NCBI GenBank assembly: GCA_047495785.1
Contig: JBLDXI010000003.1
Span: forward strand, 3,906,001 to 3,970,000
Reading direction: 5' to 3'
Origin: Lepidodermella squamata
Lineage: Eukaryota; Animalia; Gastrotricha
DNA length: 64,000 nucleotides
Shown piece after piece: positions 4,424 to 59,177 of this stretch (the first letter of the stretch is position 1; each line of letters begins with the position of its first letter). A program made the translations under genes and the position numbers. The notes below the pieces were generated by a model, which worked only from the letters and a program-made list of their open reading frames with translations, did no database searches and was not told the origin of the DNA.

Positions 4424-6360
4424 ATGCCAAAACATGGTAAAACGGTCAAATTCAGCAGGGAAGTAGAGTGAGTTTTACTTGTAGCTTTCCTAAGAGTGGG
4501 CCTTTATTTCAATTCTTTTTACTAGCGATGTCGAAGAGCAATACATTCGCAGTGGCGGAAAAGATCCATACGTGCTAACACTGCTCACTCGAGCGTACAG
4601 CGATGGGAAGAAAACAACCGATGCCGATCAACGAAAAGCGCTGAATAAGAGTTATGAAACCATAAGTAAGCTTTTTGCCTATTTTCATTCTCAGGGTGAC
4701 GTTTGGTTCACATCAGAGGAGGCACTAGTCCGGCAGTACAATGATATTGAGCTTGATAACGTAAAATTGCAATACGAGCTTATGTCGATTCAGAACAAGC
4801 TCAAAGCCCAGCTTGACGATAAAACGAAGAAAGGTTAGACATCAAAATATTTCGTCAAAAAGTTCAAATTAGTATTATTTTTAGATGAAGCGAAAAAAGG
4901 TTCCGCGGCGGGCATGGGCAAGAAACCCTCACCAAATGGCGGCGATCAACATTTACCTTTGGTTCAACCAATGTCCTACGTCTCGCCCGTTTCGCTGCCA
5001 GTGATACCCAATATTCAGTTGAATCAATCCAACAATCAACACCAGTCATTTTCGAAATTCCCGGGAATAGCTAATATGCCATATCCTGGCATGCTGCCGA
5101 ATTTCCGAAACCCATTTGGGAATACTTACATTGTAACAGGTCTCTTCAAAGATACGTTGCTTGAAAATCCTCTTTATTAAATGTGTATTAGGCGATGAAA
5201 TATACATTAACGGCATGGATGTGGGTGAAAAACCACCTACATCGCCATCCCATAAATTGAGGGTTCAGCCGAATGCGCTGGTAAACACGGCAACTTCACC
5301 GTTATCAAGACGAGACTTGAATCTACACGAGGCAAGAAAATTATCGGCAGGCCAGGCCCCCAAATTCTACAGCTCTACTCCTATTATTGGATTAGATGGC
5401 GAGGTTAATGCTGAAGACGATGGAACGGTAGAGTATTTAATAGTGCAGACAATTTAGCAAAATTTAGCTCCCAACAGATTGAATACAACGGAGAACCATT
5501 TTACGAGGTCAATCGTGCAGTCCCACAGGGCCCGTATGATTTCAAGTGAGCGCGTTCAAGATTCGTTTTCTCGTTTTACTAGTCATTTATTCTTTTAGCT
5601 CTGGGATACTTATATTTTTCGATTTCGTGACGAAGCTACCAAAAGAGGCTAGATACTGCCGGTTGTCAATAGCTTTAATAACAGCCGGCCGAATGAAACC
5701 TCCAATATCATTCCCAGCTTTACCGACCGAACAGTATGCCCCAGGTAAATATAAGTTTAACAAGTTGGTAATTTATTATGTCGCTTGTATATTGATTCTA
5801 GGGGATCATCCTGAATTCAAGCACTTCACTACGGTTTGCCGATTTGCCTACTCTCTTGGAGTATCTGGAGGGTATGCTGCTGAAAAATTGCTGTCGTTAT
5901 TTTCAAGTTTTGTTGATAATTAGGCGACCTACTGGCGATTCTATGAAAAGTGGAATAAGTTTTGTTGCTGAGTTGATGATTTCGCCTGATAAGCCCGTTG
6001 ACGAGCAAGCACCAGTTCTCGGCTGGATTCGACACGGGTGAGAAGGATTATTTGAGAAATGCAATTTTAATCTTATCGCTCACATGTATCAGATGGGCAC
6101 CTATTTCAGCGACAAGAAGAGTTTTTCCCGATGATCCTTATTTGAAAACTTATGCTGGTCGCTACCGAACAACTTTAAGGAAAGAGCTACCGTTAACTCG
6201 GGATTCCGAAGGTTTGCTCGAATTTACTCAAGAATCAAAGCAGCAGAAAGTTGACCATCGCACCGAACTGTTTTACCGAATCGCGAATGCTCACCAATCC
6301 TCCACAGAGCGAATGGGCCCCGTTGATATCAAATATATGGAATATTATGACGTTTTTTAA
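4424..6360 (+). CDS. CCDC17: Coiled-coil domain-containing protein 17-like (multi-exon)
   Basis: GGxDP coiled-coil module, then GPYDF.SG.LIFFDF, GRYRTTLR and ELFYRIANA...YMEYY, matching the CCDC17 C-terminal domain (PYDP.AG.VIFYDF, GRWRLPLR, ELFLRLVNA). Confidence 0.8.
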
Positions 6361-27253: not shown

Positions 27254-27637
27254 TTAGAGTGAAAGTTCGGATAGCGGCTGCTTTAACGCAGCGACAACTG
27301 AGACTAGTTTCGCTTTTATCAAACCATATTCAACACTGGCATCTGTTTGAAGACACATTAGTAGATTGCCAACAACTCGAGCGACGCCGATTCGACCTCG
27401 CTCGCATTCGAAAAGCAGCACACTCAGTTGATCGTCACATAGCGCGGCCCGGCCGTGTTTCTCGAATGTAGTCCAGGCACTCGAGACAATTGCACATAGC
27501 ACCCGCACATCTGCAGCAGCAAGTTGATGATGACTCAACAAAGCACCGTCGACATTCATCAGAGCAGCACATGTAACACCGGGTGTCGTTGAAAAAGCCT
27601 CGCCTAAAACGGCGTTCAAACCTTTAGCTTTAAGCAT
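27254..27637 (-). CDS. LAMTOR2: Ragulator complex protein LAMTOR2 (roadblock/LC7)
   Basis: MLKAKGLNAVL...LMNVDGALL...AIVSSAW...ECERGRIGVARV..LLMCL...YGLIKAK...L.QPL aligns along its length with LAMTOR2. Confidence 0.93.
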   Translation of the reverse strand: MLKAKGLNAVLGEAFSTTPGVTCAALMNVDGALLSHHQLAAADVRVLCAIVSSAWTTFEKHGRAALCDDQLSVLLFECERGRIGVARVVGNLLMCLQTDASVEYGLIKAKLVSVVAALKQPLSELSL

Positions 27638-27672
27638 CTATGAAAGGAAACACGAATTGGGGAAAATAAAAT

Positions 27673-28542
27673 TCATTTATTAGCAGATAATTTCTTTTTC
27701 TTGCTTTTCGGCGGTTCTAGTTTTTCATTTTCAGCGTTCTCTTCAACCACATTTACATCTTCAGCAGATAAACCTCCAACAACTTGTACTCCCAAAATGC
27801 CGCGACGAGAGAGACCGTGATGTAATGCGGCAAGAGGTGCGTCAAGGACGCTAGCCCAGCCATCGCGGATGTTCAAACCGAGGAAATCCGCCAAATTCGC
27901 TACATCGGCGGGTGGACGCAGCTCGATTGCACTTTTAGCTTCGCCCGATAGCGCAAACAAACCTTTACCGCCGCCTTTTGTACGCGATGTTAGAACTTGA
28001 GCGAATGCAATCGACGAAGTTCGCGTAGTGGAGTCTCGTATCATAGGTCCATAGTTCATTTCGCATACAAGTCCTGAGGCGTGGAGTAAAGAGTGACGCA
28101 AACTCTGTGGTGTCCACTGGAGCACGTTGAATGATATTACATCTACCGGGACCTGTCCTTCGCAAGCTGAAGTCAACAAGGCTTCACTGAGAGGCTTCAG
28201 GGCGATTATATCGAAATAAGCTGCAGTTGGGTCTCTTAGAACCCGAGCGATAGACATATCTTCGGCAATCAAGGTGAGGCGTGAATAAATTTTGACTGAT
28301 TCAGGTAGTTTGATTTGCGATACCAACTTTTTGAAAACGTTGTGAGAAGGAATTTTGATCGGACGATTGTCTTTAGGCACCTCAAATTCATAGGTGAGGA
28401 CGATATTTCGATAGCCCAATTCAATGAGAGTTCTGACACGGGCTAACGTTTCCTCGTCTGATAGTGACACAGGAACATTCAAGTCCCATGTGTCTGCTTT
28501 GGATGCAAGGCCAGCTTTAGAGCGCTTAGTTCTTTTCTTCAT
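27673..28542 (-). CDS. RPP30: Ribonuclease P/MRP protein subunit p30
   Basis: WDLNV, ELGY.NIVL, IYSRLTL, FDIIAL.P, E.NYGPMIRDS..R and SGEA....ELRPPADVANL motifs; first in-frame ATG at 28542 (the track's 28704 start is not ATG). Confidence 0.92.
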   Translation of the reverse strand: MKKRTKRSKAGLASKADTWDLNVPVSLSDEETLARVRTLIELGYRNIVLTYEFEVPKDNRPIKIPSHNVFKKLVSQIKLPESVKIYSRLTLIAEDMSIARVLRDPTAAYFDIIALKPLSEALLTSACEGQVPVDVISFNVLQWTPQSLRHSLLHASGLVCEMNYGPMIRDSTTRTSSIAFAQVLTSRTKGGGKGLFALSGEAKSAIELRPPADVANLADFLGLNIRDGWASVLDAPLAALHHGLSRRGILGVQVVGGLSAEDVNVVEENAENEKLEPPKSKKKKLSANK

Positions 28543-28855
28543 TAGCGTTGTTTGGATTTTCAGGCACTTGTAGACCGACAAGTCTAGCAGTTTCAGCAAT
28601 AGACCGTATTCCTTTGGCGTGGTACCTATCGACCAACTCCTGACGCTGGCGGCTACTTCGTAGGAAGGATAGATATGTTTCCGCGATGTAGCGCTGTTCT
28701 TCACTGTGCCGGCAATATTGCTCAGCAGTGTCCCGGTTTTTTCTCGCCGATGTTGTTAGATAGTTCCACAATTGGCTTTTTCGCACTTTTTTGTAAGATG
28801 AATAGCTTTCAAATCGATGTAACTCGTTGGCTATATTTCTTAGAACTTTTAGCAT
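28526..28855 (-). CDS. FMC1: FMC1 (C7orf55) mitochondrial ATP synthase assembly factor
   Basis: 109 aa; LR.I..EL...YL....R....T.EQYCR...E....AETYL.FLRS.R...EL...YH.KG.RS..ETA.LVGL..P is the FMC1 signature. Confidence 0.9.
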   Translation of the reverse strand: MLKVLRNIANELHRFESYSSYKKVRKSQLWNYLTTSARKNRDTAEQYCRHSEEQRYIAETYLSFLRSSRQRQELVDRYHAKGIRSIAETARLVGLQVPENPNNANEEKN

Positions 28856-29403
28856 GCCTAACCAACAGTAAAGTAACGAACCTTCATTACTATGATTTAA
28901 TTAAAAAAATTAAGACCAGAGGATTCAGCTTTTATGAATTGTAAATGCCATGATCATGGTTCTATCTGCTATAACAGATGATAGGCGACGCCTTCGTTTG
29001 AAGTTAAGTTAAGAATTAGGAGTTACTACTTGACTGTTAGCCAGCAGCAAATTAAGAAGCCAGCCAGCTTTACTTAGTTCCAGCTGGTAGCTAAAAGAGG
29101 TGGCTGAGATCACGAGTTAAGCACCAGGTAGCAGCTGTTTAAGCAGTTCTCGCATAAACAAAGGCGACCGAGATATTCCAGTCTCAATCAAACCCTCTTT
29201 AAGCTCGAAGGTCTACTCTAGCAAACCTCGACAACTTAACTTGTTGCATGGAACGCTTCAAACTCGCCCAACTTTTCCCAGAGGAATCCCAAAATCAACC
29301 TCCAAAAATTATTTTCCCGCGCGTTTTTGACTCAAAATATATATATAATCAATTTTGAACTATTAAAATTTTATCCCGTTATTTTTCAAATTCTTATATA
29401 TTT

Positions 29404-34504: not shown

Positions 34505-37061
34505 ATGAAAACACACCAGACTGGCAGTGGCCAGTCGTCTGGAGGCGTCAAGATGTGTTTGGTGTGCGGCGACAAGGCCTCCGGTAGCCACTACGGCATC
34601 GATACCTGCGAGGGCTGCAAGGGATTCTTTCGTCGGTCTGAAGCGGGTGGCAAACTGCAGTACAAATGCTCCCGAACAAATGGTAACTGCCACATCGATC
34701 GCAGCAGCAGAATTCGTTGCCAGTATTGCCGTTATCAGGTATGAATTGATTTTACTTATTAGGAGCAACACTAAAATTGACCCAGTTACATTGACTAATC
34801 CACTGCGAAATAGCTCTTCTGACACATTTTTTCTACAGACAGTTGATGCGGGATTTTTTTTAATCCATCATACCGTTATTCGTAAATTTAGAAAAAGTCA
34901 CCACTACTTCGTGATTTCATGATTTCTTGCTTGATTTGTATTATCGCATCTGTGAAATATGCATGTCGAATAGTATGTCATGGGGCTGGTTGGCTCCTTG
35001 TTTTCAATAGGCTTGGTGCATCCAGAGTTGTTGAATGAAAATCTTTGTGAAAATGTCGTGCGTTTTTCGGCGCAGTAAAAATTATTAAGGGGCCTTTTTA
35101 TTTAATTTTTTCGCCATTTCATTTATTTTGCGAGGTTTCCCGTCAAAATCAGTAAAATTAATAATTTTATTTGATTTTGGTAGAAATGTCTCGCGCTCGG
35201 AATGAATCGCTCGAAGTCGAAATACGGCCGCCAGTCGAAGACGAAAAGCCTATTCAACGCCGTTCGCGTCATGCCCATCGACGGCCCGGCCACATCGTCA
35301 CATCCCTACGCCTTGCAATCGTCGGCCAGCCTTGCCAGCCGTTACCTCGCCGCAGCCGAAGCCGCCGCATCGCCCACATCGACCAGCAACAACGGCGCGA
35401 TGTTCCTCGACGGCCGCGACTACACAACCGACGTGATGACTGTAAATGGCCACGTGATCGGTGCAACCCCGTCTAATCGATCGTCCTGTGCTCACATGAT
35501 GGTGCCGCCCGCCGCTCACTCGTCGCCCTCGTCCTCGGCCTCATCGCTCCACGTCAACAACGCAACGATTGGCGCAAGCGCGAGTTTCGTCGACTACTCA
35601 TCGCCATTTTCGGCCTCGAACTACGACGCTAATTACCTATCATCAGCTGCCTACCAAACTACCACACCCAGCAGTTCGGCTTTCACGCAATGGAACAACG
35701 CCACGCCTAGCTCTACTGCGACTGCTACCAACCCGGCTGCGTCTTTTTGTGTTGCGTATCAAGCTAGTAATACCGAACAAACCAGCAGTTATTTCTACTC
35801 AAATTACAACTCGACGTACAACTCAAGCGATTTAGTAATCACAACTCCGGTCAATCGTCGCAGCTCATCTATCGCGAAACCAAGTGCTGTTAAGGTGGCT
35901 AGTTCTTTGAATGCGTCGATTCCGAACCCCTCGATGATGGCTGGGATGATTTCGACGGCGTTCACCCGCCATCTTGGTCCAAATGAGGTGATACCAAAAG
36001 CTGGCTCGTGCGTCGCTGTTCACCGTGGGTTTTTCTCTTCGCCGTCGCATTTTTGGTTGTCGTGGGCGTTGGCGCTGGAGAAACTTGGCAAACGTGTTGT
36101 CGAATTCGCTAAAGATATTCCCGGTTTTAACTTGTTTTCTCAATACGATCAAATGCTTCTACTCAAAAGATGTAAGTTTTAAGAGATTTTCAGTATTTTT
36201 TCACTCGTTTCATTATTTTATTTTATAGCTTGTCTTCAATTGGTTTTCATTCGGCTTATGCGTACTTACGATGCTGGAACCAACTCACTTCTGCTACCTC
36301 TCTGCTCCGATACCATGTCACCATCGTCCAGTATCGTATCGGTTGATCCCGATGTTGTCGAAACTCGCATCTCGATTTCTGAAATCGCCGAGTCTGCAGG
36401 TTTGGCTACATGCTTTTCCGCTTGAAGTAGAGATCGCTAGAGGTCGCATTAGCAGTTGAGCTCAATCTTTGTTCATTTTCATTAAAAAGCCGCTCTGAAA
36501 GCGACTGACCCCTCCGGAAGTGGCTCTAATTAAAGAGCCACCAGGCCGGAACGTTCATCAACGGCCGCATGGGACCAGCTACCTGTGAAGGTCGCCGGCC
36601 TCGTGTGGCCAAGTTCGCGCTCAGGGCCAGTCACCACGCCTCGTCATCGCGGGTTGGGTTTGTCGTCAGATGAGGCTGACGTTGGGGCAAATCTAAATAA
36701 AGAAATGATCCCAAGAAGTATGATCTTAAATTGATATTATAAATTTGTTTGAGCCCGTTCTGGGATGAAACTTCACACAGCCAGTCTATAGCTGTGACTA
36801 TTCAAATTACAAAAATAAAAAAAAAAATGGAAAATTGAGGAAAAAAGTTGCTCCTTGGCAGGGAATCGAACCCTGGTCTCCCGCGTGACAGGCGGGGATA
36901 CTAACCACTATACTACCAAGGATTGGCTGATTATATAAGTCCCAAGCACCGACTGATAAGATTAGGCACGCCGAAGCGAAAATTAGTGCAGCAGTTTAGT
37001 ATCACTTTTCGAAAAATATGGAACGCTTCACGATTTTGCGTGTCATCCTTGCGCAGGGGCC

Positions 37062-37100
<39 letters not shown>

Positions 37101-58357: not shown

Positions 58358-59030
58358 TTCGCGGCCGGTCAGCCGCTGCCGATTGACCGGTTTTCAACCG
58401 AAATATGTCACAAAACTCAGAAATTTTATAAATCGCGTCTTTTGTTTACTATTAGCGTCTTTTGACCGCGCGCACTCACCGATTTCAGCGGGAAGCGATT
58501 AAATAAGCGCGGCGGATTAACATTTTGACCGCGCCTTCACAAATTCGCGGCGCGCGCACAAATTCCGCGTCATTTTACACATTTCAGCGTCGTGTTTACT
58601 TTGGGCGACTGACTATTGTTTATAAGCTCACCCACAGTATTATTGTTCAATAAAAATGGTTTTTGTTAAAATGCTTTCTTTGGTTCAAATTTTTGCTTTG
58701 CTAGCCCAATTCCTAAATGGAGTCTGGTTCGCCCAGTAACTCAATGATTTGGATTTTAACCGAAATTAATAATAAAAGATCCACCTTAAAACACGTGAGC
58801 GGGCGGAATCACCGGGCGGAAACACCGGGCGGAATCACATTTTCCATTGAAGCAAAAAATAACCAACCATGTGGGAAATAATTAATCCAGTTATACAGGT
58901 GATAAAGATGCAATATTTCACTGAGTTTCATCAGTAGAGTTTGCGTAGAAAATTAAATCAAAACGAATTGAGTCATTTTCGCAGCAAATATCTGAGGTTA
59001 AATAGTAAATTTTCTGAGATACACTCTCTT

Positions 59031-59071
59031 TTAGCCTGAAGATGGGCACGTCGTGCTCGAAACGTCGCTAA
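59031..59071 (+). ncRNA. Minimal type I hammerhead ribozyme (Penelope-like element pLTR type)
   Basis: TTAGC-CTGAAGA-T-GGGCAC(GTC)GTGCTC-GAAAC-GTC-GCTAA: stem I TTAGC/GCTAA, core CUGAAGA/GAAA, 6-bp stem II, palindromic ACGU stem III, cleavage after C59066. Confidence 0.88.
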
Positions 59072-59177
59072 CAATATACCAAAAAAAGGAGACTCGTGGC
59101 TGCAAAAAATGACTCAATTCGTTTTGAATAAAGATTTAGGTTGAAATTAAGTAATCGAGTCCGTTTTTTCCGCGATT

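What the first reader, a model, noticed from the sequence alone, without database searches (positions are those of the whole stretch)
27673..28855. FMC1-RPP30 overlapping ORFs: candidate leaky-scanning bicistronic mRNA
Seen: the only plausible RPP30 start (ATG 28542) lies 17 nt inside the FMC1 CDS (...gctaATGaagaaaagaacTAA). There is no intergenic spacer and no clear splice acceptor. The 310 nt between the two start codons contain no ATG in any frame, where roughly 5 would be expected by chance. Inference: one mRNA encodes a mitochondrial ATP synthase assembly factor and a nuclear RNase P/MRP subunit, the second made by leaky scanning or termination-reinitiation. AUG depletion of the first ORF is the expected signature of leaky scanning.
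Basis: partly seen in the sequence, partly recalled or inferred. Interest (0 to 1): 0.82.

Follow-up and report, generated by a model that had tools for sequence, protein, structure and literature searches.

The report
Two-protein FMC1-RPP30 messenger RNA
In a small, compact animal genome that uses spliced-leader operons, one mature mRNA appears to carry two overlapping genes (a mitochondrial assembly factor and an RNase P subunit). The second is most likely read by ribosomes that skip the first start codon, which is a known kind of trick seen here in a new gene pair and setting.

Summary
On the minus strand an FMC1-like ORF (28855-28526) overlaps RPP30 (28542-27673) by 17 nt, with no ATG in any frame between the two starts.

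RNA-derived contigs add three things:
- A spliced leader (SL) is joined 2 nt before the FMC1 ATG.
- Contigs run unbroken through FMC1 and RPP30 at equal depth to a poly(A) tail 11-16 nt after the RPP30 stop.
- The next gene, LAMTOR2-like, is cut off by poly(A) and its own SL. No SL junction is seen in front of RPP30.

The only close relative (63% identical RPP30, metagenome contig) keeps the same gene order, a 26-nt overlap in the same frame, and a 295-nt ATG-free stretch ending exactly at the RPP30 ATG.

The depletion is rare among other coding sequence: 0.4% and 0/1213 windows. With the protein sequence held fixed it is weak (P about 0.1-0.3 per species).

My reading is a bicistronic SL-FMC1-RPP30 mRNA, with RPP30 translated by leaky scanning (about 0.55). 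The rivals are a minor internally trans-spliced RPP30 mRNA and termination-reinitiation. Translation itself was not tested.

This is a new member of a known kind. The scan noted other bicistron candidates elsewhere in this genome (s1-365950).

The parts
28858..28876 (-). Pyrimidine/T-rich tract and AG acceptor (AG = 28859-28858) where the spliced leader is joined, 2 nt before the FMC1 ATG
   Evidence: the X3 contig (record 17) has 11 non-genomic letters beyond 28859. In mRNA sense these read ...ATTTGTGTCTA followed by AGGCATG. The same leader end is seen on LAMTOR2 in X1. The genomic contig X2 runs straight through.
28526..28855 (-). FMC1-like (LYR-type) ORF, 109 aa, no internal Met
   Evidence: Complex1_LYR_2 below the Pfam cut-off in both species (E 6e-3 and 1.3e-4); the best Atlas cluster is 'Protein FMC1 homolog' (0.91, 195/256 features); 45% identical to the upstream ORF of the relative.
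28543..28852 (-). 310-nt stretch without ATG in any frame, bounded exactly by the two start codons
28526..28542 (-). 17-nt overlap of the FMC1 tail and the RPP30 start. The RPP30 ATG is formed by AAT-G (Asn-Glu) of FMC1.
   Evidence: The relative has a 26-nt overlap, also built on AAT-G (Asn-Gly), in the same +1 frame.
27673..28542 (-). RPP30 (RNase P/MRP subunit p30) ORF, 289 aa
   Evidence: PF01876 E=1.1e-34 (120 bits, cut-off 35)..
27676..27681 (-). AATAAA poly(A) signal overlapping the last RPP30 codons
   Evidence: Sequence. Poly(A) tails begin 14-19 nt downstream.
27657..27662 (-). Poly(A) addition sites of the FMC1-RPP30 mRNA
   Evidence: runs of 19 and 21 T (plus-strand view) abut 27657 (X1) and 27662 (X3).
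27638..27655 (-). Acceptor (tttcctttcatAG, AG = 27639-27638) where a spliced leader is joined directly before the LAMTOR2-like ATG
   Evidence: loose ends at 27639 in X1 and X3 show two different leaders.
27254..27637 (-). LAMTOR2-like Roadblock/LC7 ORF, 127 aa, the next gene of the operon
   Evidence: PF03259 E=3.5e-8. Same position in the relative.
28860..29246 (-). Probable outron/promoter-proximal region upstream of FMC1, shared with the divergent Grp94 gene (ATG 29733, plus strand)
   Evidence: RNA contigs at about a tenth of the FMC1/RPP30 depth (X1 records 7-8, X3 record 18). The strand is not known from contigs.

Best explanation
FMC1 and RPP30 are expressed from one mature bicistronic mRNA. 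The primary transcript starts in the region shared with the divergent Grp94 gene. A 30-nt spliced leader is trans-spliced 2 nt before the FMC1 AUG. The RNA runs through both ORFs without introns and is polyadenylated 11-16 nt after the RPP30 stop.

About 21-24 nt further on, the next gene (LAMTOR2-like) is released by its own SL trans-splicing. The bicistron is therefore the first unit of an operon.

Scanning 40S subunits start at the FMC1 AUG (G at -3, no G at +4) only part of the time. Those that pass meet no other AUG for 310 nt and start at the RPP30 AUG.

Shown: the mRNA architecture, with the limits of assembled contigs, and conservation of the overlap and the AUG-free stretch. Inferred: that RPP30 is translated from this mRNA, and by leaky scanning.
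For: (the RNA nature of the runs is shown by the SMART oligo, poly(A) tails and SL ends; X2 serves as the genomic control):
- X3 record 17 is SL + 28859..27875 in one piece, and record 16 continues to poly(A) at 27662.
- X1 record 5 (28430-28783) crosses the overlap at depth 247, against 271 for the RPP30 body.
- There are no joints, no poly(A) end after FMC1, and no SL loose end or contig break between 28460 and 28753.
- By contrast, the RPP30/LAMTOR2 boundary shows poly(A) and SL ends and no bridging cDNA contig.

(relative L001/L002): the order is the same, Grp94 divergent, then FMC1, RPP30, LAMTOR2, NFX1. There is a 26-nt overlap in the same +1 frame. An acceptor (ttttattcaatAG) sits 7 nt before the homologous FMC1 ATG at 5703. 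No ATG occurs from 5706 to 6000.

such ATG-free stretches are rare. They make up 1.2% and 0.6% of ATG gaps, and 0.4% and 0/1213 of windows in other coding sequences. In both species the stretch ends exactly at the RPP30 ATG.

all six synonymous sites that could create an ATG avoid it.

in L001 a TAA directly precedes the RPP30 ATG in its frame, so there is no N-terminal extension or upstream fusion.

Neither leader sequence contains an ATG.
Against: - No translation data exist.
- Contigs are assemblies, not single molecules, and they drop rare variants. A minor SL-RPP30 mRNA could be missed.
- With the amino-acid sequence fixed, the ATG-free state is unremarkable: P 0.08-0.19 in the window, 0.31-0.34 in L001, and about 0.06 jointly at synonymous sites.
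- FMC1 may simply be a Met-poor family. I could not fetch orthologues from species where it is monocistronic.
- The start contexts are not the classic weak-then-strong pair. FMC1 has G at -3 in both species, while RPP30 has C (window) or T (L001).
- An AG at the homologous Leu-(Gln/Lys)-Val codons, 24 and 12 nt before the RPP30 ATG, could act as a weak acceptor in both species.
- Only two lineages are available.
Confidence: 0.55

Rival explanations
1. Alternative processing. A fraction of the primary transcripts is trans-spliced at a weak acceptor inside the FMC1 coding region, for example ...ggtctacaAG|tg about 24 nt before the RPP30 ATG, or starts at an internal TSS. This gives a monocistronic RPP30 mRNA that is the real template. 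On this reading the long RNA serves FMC1 only, and the ATG-free stretch is a by-product of FMC1 composition.
For: The genome trans-splices, and the downstream gene LAMTOR2 is resolved that way. An AG preceded by a T/G-rich run resembling the FMC1 acceptor lies at the homologous position in both species. The codon-aware statistics leave room for chance. Contigs show presence, not absence.
Against: There is no SL loose end or contig break in 28460-28753 in either cDNA data set. SL junctions of FMC1 and LAMTOR2, and even odd SL chimeras at a quarter of the depth, were recorded or broke contigs. Depth is equal over the FMC1 part and the RPP30 part in X1, 247 against 271. The candidate acceptors lack the T-rich tract of the two proven ones. 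Using them would destroy the FMC1 mRNA.
Confidence: 0.2
2. Termination-reinitiation. Ribosomes translate FMC1 and terminate at 28528-28526. The 40S subunit then moves back 14 nt (23 nt in the relative) to restart at the RPP30 AUG.
For: The stop lies just downstream of the restart AUG in both species, with 17-nt and 26-nt overlaps. Short backward movement of post-termination 40S subunits and restart at overlapping AUGs are documented in viruses and discussed for algal bicistrons (PMC10275272, PMC11892635).
Against: Reinitiation after a 109-codon ORF is normally inefficient without a dedicated element. No UGGGA-type 18S-complementary motif lies within 80 nt upstream of the restart site in either species (read directly). 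The sequence around the overlap is not conserved. Reinitiation does not need an AUG-free ORF1.
Confidence: 0.15
3. A fusion or other recoding product, such as +1 frameshifting in the overlap that makes an FMC1-RPP30 fusion, or internal ribosome entry.
For: RPP30 is in the +1 frame of FMC1 in both species. In the window the RPP30 frame is open for 71 codons upstream of its ATG.
Against: In L001 a TAA sits directly before the RPP30 ATG in that frame. The overlap sequences share no slippery or shift-prone motif. A mitochondrial assembly factor fused to a nuclear RNase P subunit makes little functional sense. There is no conserved sequence for an IRES.
Confidence: 0.04

Closest known systems
Conserved bicistronic nuclear genes of green algae translated by leaky scanning (PMC11892635)
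   Same: Two unrelated proteins are encoded on one capped, polyadenylated mRNA. ORF1 is small. AUGs upstream of ORF2 are scarce or absent (the TOM22 locus has none). The 5' leader is short. The arrangement is conserved over long evolutionary distances.
   Different: Here the organism is an animal, the 5' end is made by SL trans-splicing, the two ORFs overlap rather than being separated by an inter-ORF spacer, and the ORF1 start context is not clearly weak. The algal mechanism was proven by mutation. Here nothing was tested at the protein level.
Human RPP14 / HTD2 bicistronic mRNA (reviewed in PMC4705651)
   Same: One mRNA pairs an RNase P protein subunit with a mitochondrial protein. HTD2 belongs to mitochondrial fatty-acid synthesis. 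From general knowledge, that pathway acylates the ACP on which LYR-type proteins depend, and FMC1 is LYR-like.
   Different: The subunit differs (p14 versus p30), the partner differs, and the order is reversed: in human the RNase P subunit comes first. The human translation mechanism was not established either. There is no evidence that the two pairings share an origin.
Drosophila dicistronic genes, e.g. Sloth1/Sloth2 (PMC9681215; overview PMC4528330)
   Same: These are animal bicistronic mRNAs that encode small mitochondrial proteins and are read by leaky scanning.
   Different: Those two products are paralogous peptides acting together. Here the products are unrelated and go to different compartments. 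Drosophila has no SL trans-splicing or operons.
SL trans-spliced operons of nematodes, tunicates and chaetognaths (PMC1657053, PMC2481426, PMC7986045)
   Same: Same-strand housekeeping genes are packed with tiny spacers. A poly(A) site is followed within about 20 nt by an SL acceptor, as at the RPP30/LAMTOR2 junction. Several leader variants exist.
   Different: The FMC1/RPP30 junction has neither a poly(A) site nor an observed SL acceptor, so this junction is not resolved in the operon way. The leader sequences match no published one I could find and differ from chaetognath leaders.
Viral and cellular termination-reinitiation at overlapping stop/start codons (PMC10275272)
   Same: The stop of ORF1 lies a few nucleotides downstream of the AUG of ORF2.
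   Different: No upstream 18S-complementary motif was found, and the overlap is not conserved in sequence or length.

Membership tests
Eukaryotic bicistronic mRNA read by leaky scanning | Both complete ORFs lie on one mature (capped/SL-bearing, polyadenylated) mRNA with no processing site between them | tested here: met
   SL at 28859, collinear contigs through the overlap at the same depth as the gene bodies, poly(A) at 27657/27662, and no joints or internal SL/poly(A) ends. Caveat: these are assembled contigs, not single molecules.
Eukaryotic bicistronic mRNA read by leaky scanning | No, or only weak, AUGs between the first and the second start codon | tested here: met
   zero ATG in 310 nt (window) and in 295 nt (L001). 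Both leader sequences also lack ATG.
Eukaryotic bicistronic mRNA read by leaky scanning | Suboptimal context of the first AUG relative to the genome's consensus | tested here: inconclusive
   FMC1 has G at -3 with C or A at +4 in the two species. RPP30 has C or T at -3. A consensus for this genome could not be derived from the noisy ORF starts of the window.
Eukaryotic bicistronic mRNA read by leaky scanning | ORF2 output rises when the ORF1 AUG is weakened or removed and falls when an AUG is inserted between the starts | not testable with these tools
   Needs reporters or ribosome profiling.
SL trans-spliced operon junction | The upstream gene ends at a poly(A) site and the downstream gene's mRNA starts with the spliced leader | tested here: not met
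   At the FMC1/RPP30 junction no poly(A) end and no SL junction were seen. At the RPP30/LAMTOR2 junction, 21-24 nt long, both are present, so that junction is a member.
Termination-reinitiation (TURBS-type) | Stop of ORF1 close to or overlapping the restart AUG | tested here: met
   17-nt and 26-nt overlaps.
Termination-reinitiation (TURBS-type) | Upstream motif complementary to 18S rRNA (UGGGA core) within about 80 nt of the restart site | tested here: not met
   No TGGGA in the 80 nt before either RPP30 ATG (read).
RNase P/MRP subunit p30 (Pfam PF01876) | Full-length match above the curated cut-off | tested here: met
   120 bits against a cut-off of 35, covering residues 20-227 of 289.
FMC1 / Complex1_LYR_2 (PF13233) | Match above the curated cut-off, or a clear orthologue relation | tested here: inconclusive
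   17.6 bits against a cut-off of 22.3 in the window, and E 1.3e-4 in L001. The best Atlas cluster is 'Protein FMC1 homolog' at 0.91. The word search found no relatives. The AlphaFold model had pLDDT 48 and was unusable.

The most novel reading that the evidence does not exclude
This lineage may run two layers of polycistrony as a rule. The first layer is operons resolved by SL trans-splicing. Nested inside them would be leaky-scanning bicistrons that put a small mitochondrial protein in front of a housekeeping gene. Candidates are FMC1-RPP30 here, and PET117-CLPTM1L, CDC26-GTF3C3 and PTRHD1-NFS1 noted elsewhere in the same genome. FMC1-RPP30 would then be a second, independent coupling of an RNase P subunit to the mitochondrial acyl-ACP/LYR system, alongside vertebrate RPP14-HTD2. 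That would point to a selected co-regulation of RNA processing and mitochondrial biogenesis.
Probability: 0.2. Interest if true: 0.65.

Novelty: new member of a known kind. Interest (0 to 1): 0.45.

Why it matters
Animals with spliced-leader operons are usually described as turning every cistron into its own mRNA. Here, public RNA data show one junction of an operon left unresolved, and the arrangement is kept in a relative whose RPP30 is only 63% identical.

If RPP30 is made from this mRNA, an essential nuclear RNase P/MRP subunit is tied at fixed ratio to a mitochondrial ATP-synthase assembly factor. That echoes the human RPP14/HTD2 bicistron.

The locus also gives a clean natural test case for telling leaky scanning from reinitiation in an SL-capped animal mRNA: short leader, 310 nt without AUG, and overlapping stop and start. 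In addition, the same data give direct RNA proof of SL trans-splicing and of an operon junction in this unidentified lineage.

Tried and rejected
- **More relatives.** The word search with RPP30 gave only P0001 and a distant fungus-like hit. The same search with P0001 gave only itself, and with FMC1 nothing. Exhaustive HMMER gave one close cluster, with the next hits at 38% identity or less. Two metagenome scans, with the RPP30 and FMC1 alignments, found nothing.
- **Distant RPP30 loci.** L003 has only 46 nt of contig before RPP30, which leaves no room for an upstream ORF, and L004 has nothing called in the 600 nt before RPP30. P0005 is not on record.
- **Upstream RPP30 exon or intron.** Rejected. 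There are no joints in the RNA contigs, and the N-terminus aligns with homologues.
- **Frameshift fusion.** Rejected on the TAA before the ATG in L001 and the lack of a shared shift site.
- **Organism identity.** Not obtained. The leader strings are absent from the paper library. Chaetognath leaders differ. The compact annelid Dimorphilus is reported to lack SL trans-splicing. The Atlas taxa were uninformative.
- **SL RNA gene in the window.** None found. The near-match at 58996 is not followed by a GT donor.
- **FMC1 fold.** The AlphaFold model was too poor to search. A PDB profile search gave only chance hits.
- **Kozak consensus.** It could not be derived from long ORF starts because they are too noisy.
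- **Literature on FMC1 with RPP30.** Nothing relevant.

Full report
**What is in the sequence**

All relevant genes lie on the minus strand.
- A 109-codon ORF runs from ATG 28855 to TAA 28528-28526.
- The RPP30 ORF starts at ATG 28542, 17 nt inside the first ORF and in its +1 frame, and ends at TGA 27675-27673.
- From 28852 to 28543 there is no ATG in any frame. ATGs resume 53 and 64 nt after the RPP30 start.
- The next in-frame ATG of RPP30 is codon 96, so 28542 is the only workable start.

**Gene identities**

RPP30 matches Pfam RNase_P_p30 at 120 bits over residues 20-227. Homologues begin a few residues before the same conserved block, so no upstream exon is missing.

The first ORF is LYR-like. 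It matches Complex1_LYR_2 below the cut-off in both species, and its best Atlas cluster is 'Protein FMC1 homolog'. I accept the FMC1 label as likely but not proven.

Thirty-six nt after the RPP30 stop a Roadblock/LC7 ORF starts at 27637. From my own knowledge of the family it is LAMTOR2-like. An NFX1-type gene follows. A Grp94-type HSP90 gene is divergent on the plus strand from 29733.

**RNA evidence**

Three public runs hold this stretch.
- X2 behaves as genomic DNA: one contig covers 27000-29237 evenly.
- X1 carries the SMART template-switch oligo and poly(A) tails.
- X3 carries poly(A) tails and leader sequences.
- X1 and X3 are therefore cDNA, although they are kept only as assembled contigs.

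What the cDNA contigs show:
1. In X3, a contig of 996 letters begins with 11 non-genomic letters (mRNA sense ATTTGTGTCTA), joined at the AG 28859-28858, 2 nt before the FMC1 ATG. It runs collinearly through FMC1, the overlap and RPP30 to 27875. The next contig ends in poly(A) at 27662.
2. In X1, a contig covering 28430-28783 crosses the overlap at depth 247. The RPP30 body contig has depth 271 and ends in poly(A) at 27657. An AATAAA (27681-27676) overlaps the last RPP30 codons.
3. At 27639 both runs show a leader joined directly before the LAMTOR2 ATG. No cDNA contig bridges 27640-27656.
4. There are no joints (introns), no poly(A) end after FMC1, and no leader or contig break between 28460 and 28753.

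The operon junction RPP30/LAMTOR2 is therefore processed, while the FMC1/RPP30 junction is not, at the resolution of contigs.

GGG plus AACCATCTGCGAATATAATTTGTG gives the leader's first 24 nt in X1. The other junctions supply its end, ...TTTGTGTCTAAG. Joining the two pieces gives a 30-nt leader. That full length is my reconstruction and was not seen in one piece.

**The relative**

A word search and an exhaustive HMMER search found a single close relative, P0001, with 63% identical RPP30. All other RPP30s are at 38% identity or less.

P0001 sits on two metagenome contigs, L001 and L002, whose called genes have the same lengths and spacing. The gene order matches the window: divergent HSP90, then FMC1-like, RPP30, Robl_LC7, NFX1-like.

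Details of the FMC1/RPP30 pair in L001:
- The FMC1 homologue is 45% identical.
- It starts at the ATG 5703 that aligns with the window's start. That ATG is preceded 7 nt upstream by a good acceptor, ttttattcaatAG.
- RPP30 starts at 6001, 26 nt before the FMC1 stop, again in the +1 frame.
- No ATG occurs from 5706 to 6000.
- A TAA sits immediately before the RPP30 ATG in its frame. This rules out an N-terminal extension or an upstream fusion there.

The overlap falls in the unconserved tails of both proteins. In both species the RPP30 ATG is built from an Asn codon AAT followed by G.

**How unusual is the ATG-free stretch?**

| Null model | Window | L001 |
|---|---|---|
| Base shuffle | 4.8 ATGs expected, P(0)=0.005 | not run |
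| Share of ATG-to-ATG gaps this long | 24 of 1984 (1.2%) | 3 of 480 (0.6%) |
| ATG-free in-frame windows in other coding ORFs | 18 of 4840 (0.4%) | 0 of 1213 |
| Amino-acid sequence fixed, codons redrawn | 1.3-1.7 expected, P(0)=0.08-0.19 | 0.7-0.8 expected, P(0)=0.31-0.34 |

In each species, one of the long ATG gaps is exactly the FMC1-to-RPP30 interval.

Only four synonymous 'risk' sites exist in the window and two in L001. All six avoid ATG, with a joint P of about 0.06.

The depletion is therefore real and conserved, but it is carried mainly by the protein sequence: no Met, and few Asn/Asp/His/Tyr residues followed by a G-initial codon. Whether that reflects selection for scanning or just the make-up of FMC1 needs orthologues from species where the gene stands alone. 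I could not fetch any.

**Mechanism**

The best-supported reading is a bicistronic mRNA, SL-FMC1-RPP30-poly(A), with RPP30 initiated by 40S subunits that bypass the FMC1 AUG.

For it:
- The mRNA architecture.
- AUG-free leaders.
- An AUG-free first ORF that ends exactly at the second start in two lineages diverged to 63% (RPP30) and 45% (FMC1) protein identity.
- A first AUG with G at -3 and no G at +4.

Against it:
- No translation data.
- The weak codon-aware statistics.
- Start contexts that are not the classic weak-then-strong pair.

Rivals:
- **A minor internally trans-spliced RPP30 mRNA (about 0.2).** An AG at homologous Leu-(Gln/Lys)-Val codons exists in both species, but no junction was seen. 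Odd leader chimeras at a quarter of the local depth did break contigs in the same data, so an abundant junction should have shown.
- **Termination-reinitiation (about 0.15).** The geometry fits, but no UGGGA-type motif is present and the ORF is 109 codons long.
- **Frameshift fusion or IRES (about 0.04).**

**Comparison with what is known**

The closest mechanistic parallel is the green-algal bicistrons, shown by mutation to use leaky scanning, where AUGs upstream of ORF2 are reduced and the TOM22 locus has none (PMC11892635).

In animals, Drosophila has many dicistronic genes, including the mitochondrial Sloth1/Sloth2 pair read by leaky scanning (PMC9681215, PMC4528330).

The human RPP14 mRNA also encodes the mitochondrial dehydratase HTD2 (PMC4705651). 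This is a striking functional echo, because both cases tie an RNase P subunit to a mitochondrial protein linked to the acyl-ACP/LYR system. The link between LYR proteins and acyl-ACP is from general knowledge and was not tested here.

The surrounding layout is that of SL operons known from nematodes, tunicates and chaetognaths (PMC1657053, PMC2481426). What is particular here is the nesting: an unresolved, overlapping bicistron forms the first unit of a resolved operon.

**Novelty and score**

The kind is known. The gene pair, the overlap, the SL context and the deep conservation are new. I rate it a new member of a known kind, interest 0.45.

Earlier notes of this scan on the same genome list other bicistron candidates (s1-365950, s1-410540), a candidate SL gene array with a 30-nt leader (s1-407453), and the operon reading of this same stretch (s1-398339). 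I did not test the first two. The RNA ends found here give direct support to the last two ideas, although I could not compare the leader sequence with that array.

**Limits**

- There are only two lineages, and the organism is unidentified.
- The RNA evidence is contigs only.

Noticed in passing
window 28859 and 27639 (minus-strand 5' ends); RNA contigs prove spliced-leader trans-splicing in this genome. One leader family is seen in two pieces, a 5' part AACCATCTGCGAAT(A/T)T(A/T)(A/T)..TTTGTG and a 3' end ..TTTGTGTCTAAG. Joined, they give 30 nt, with variants in the middle. A second, unrelated leader ending ...GAATATTAAATTTTCTGAG is seen on LAMTOR2 in X3. Neither string is in the open-access paper library.
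   Followed up: partly
window 27541 and 28754, plus strand; In X1, two contigs join the first 24 nt of the leader, in forward orientation after the SMART GGG, to the strand antisense to LAMTOR2 and FMC1. No AG acceptor precedes either junction, and the last 6 leader bases are missing. These may be template-switch chimeras or antisense RNAs. Unexplained.
   Followed up: no
window 28459 (minus strand); A cDNA 5' end (SMART oligo junction) lies 83 nt inside RPP30, right at an acceptor-like tcactatcAG. It cannot encode full RPP30 and is probably a truncated or degraded RNA end.
   Followed up: no
window 27638-27662: The RPP30/LAMTOR2 operon junction is extremely short. The poly(A) site and the next gene's SL acceptor are only about 21-24 nt apart, comparable with the tightest tunicate and chaetognath operons.
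   Followed up: partly
L001 2553-8704 and L002: The whole neighbourhood is collinear in a metagenome relative whose RPP30 is only 63% identical: divergent Grp94, then FMC1-RPP30, LAMTOR2-like, NFX1-like. Among 1.84 billion representative proteins no other RPP30 exceeds 38% identity, so this animal lineage is very poorly sampled or fast-evolving.
   Followed up: partly
window 58996-59018 (+), flanks 58966-59125: A 23-mer with 3 mismatches to the second leader (GGTTAAATAGTAAATTTTCTGAG) is not followed by a GT donor. It sits between an inverted repeat (gaattgagtcattttcgcagc ... gctgcaaaaaatgactcaattc). It is not an SL RNA gene by this test, and its nature is unknown.
   Followed up: no
window 36489-37117 (-): Rfam finds U3 (36489-36727), a tRNA (36851-36922) and U6 (37012-37117) clustered on the minus strand. 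Another first-stage note (s1-398036) already covers this.
   Followed up: no
window 28902, 28945, 29251-29283: The genomic run X2 (organism B) differs from the window by small indels (+AA, -11 nt, +AAC, +TTA, +A) in the FMC1 upstream/outron region. The coding parts show only a few substitutions.
   Followed up: no
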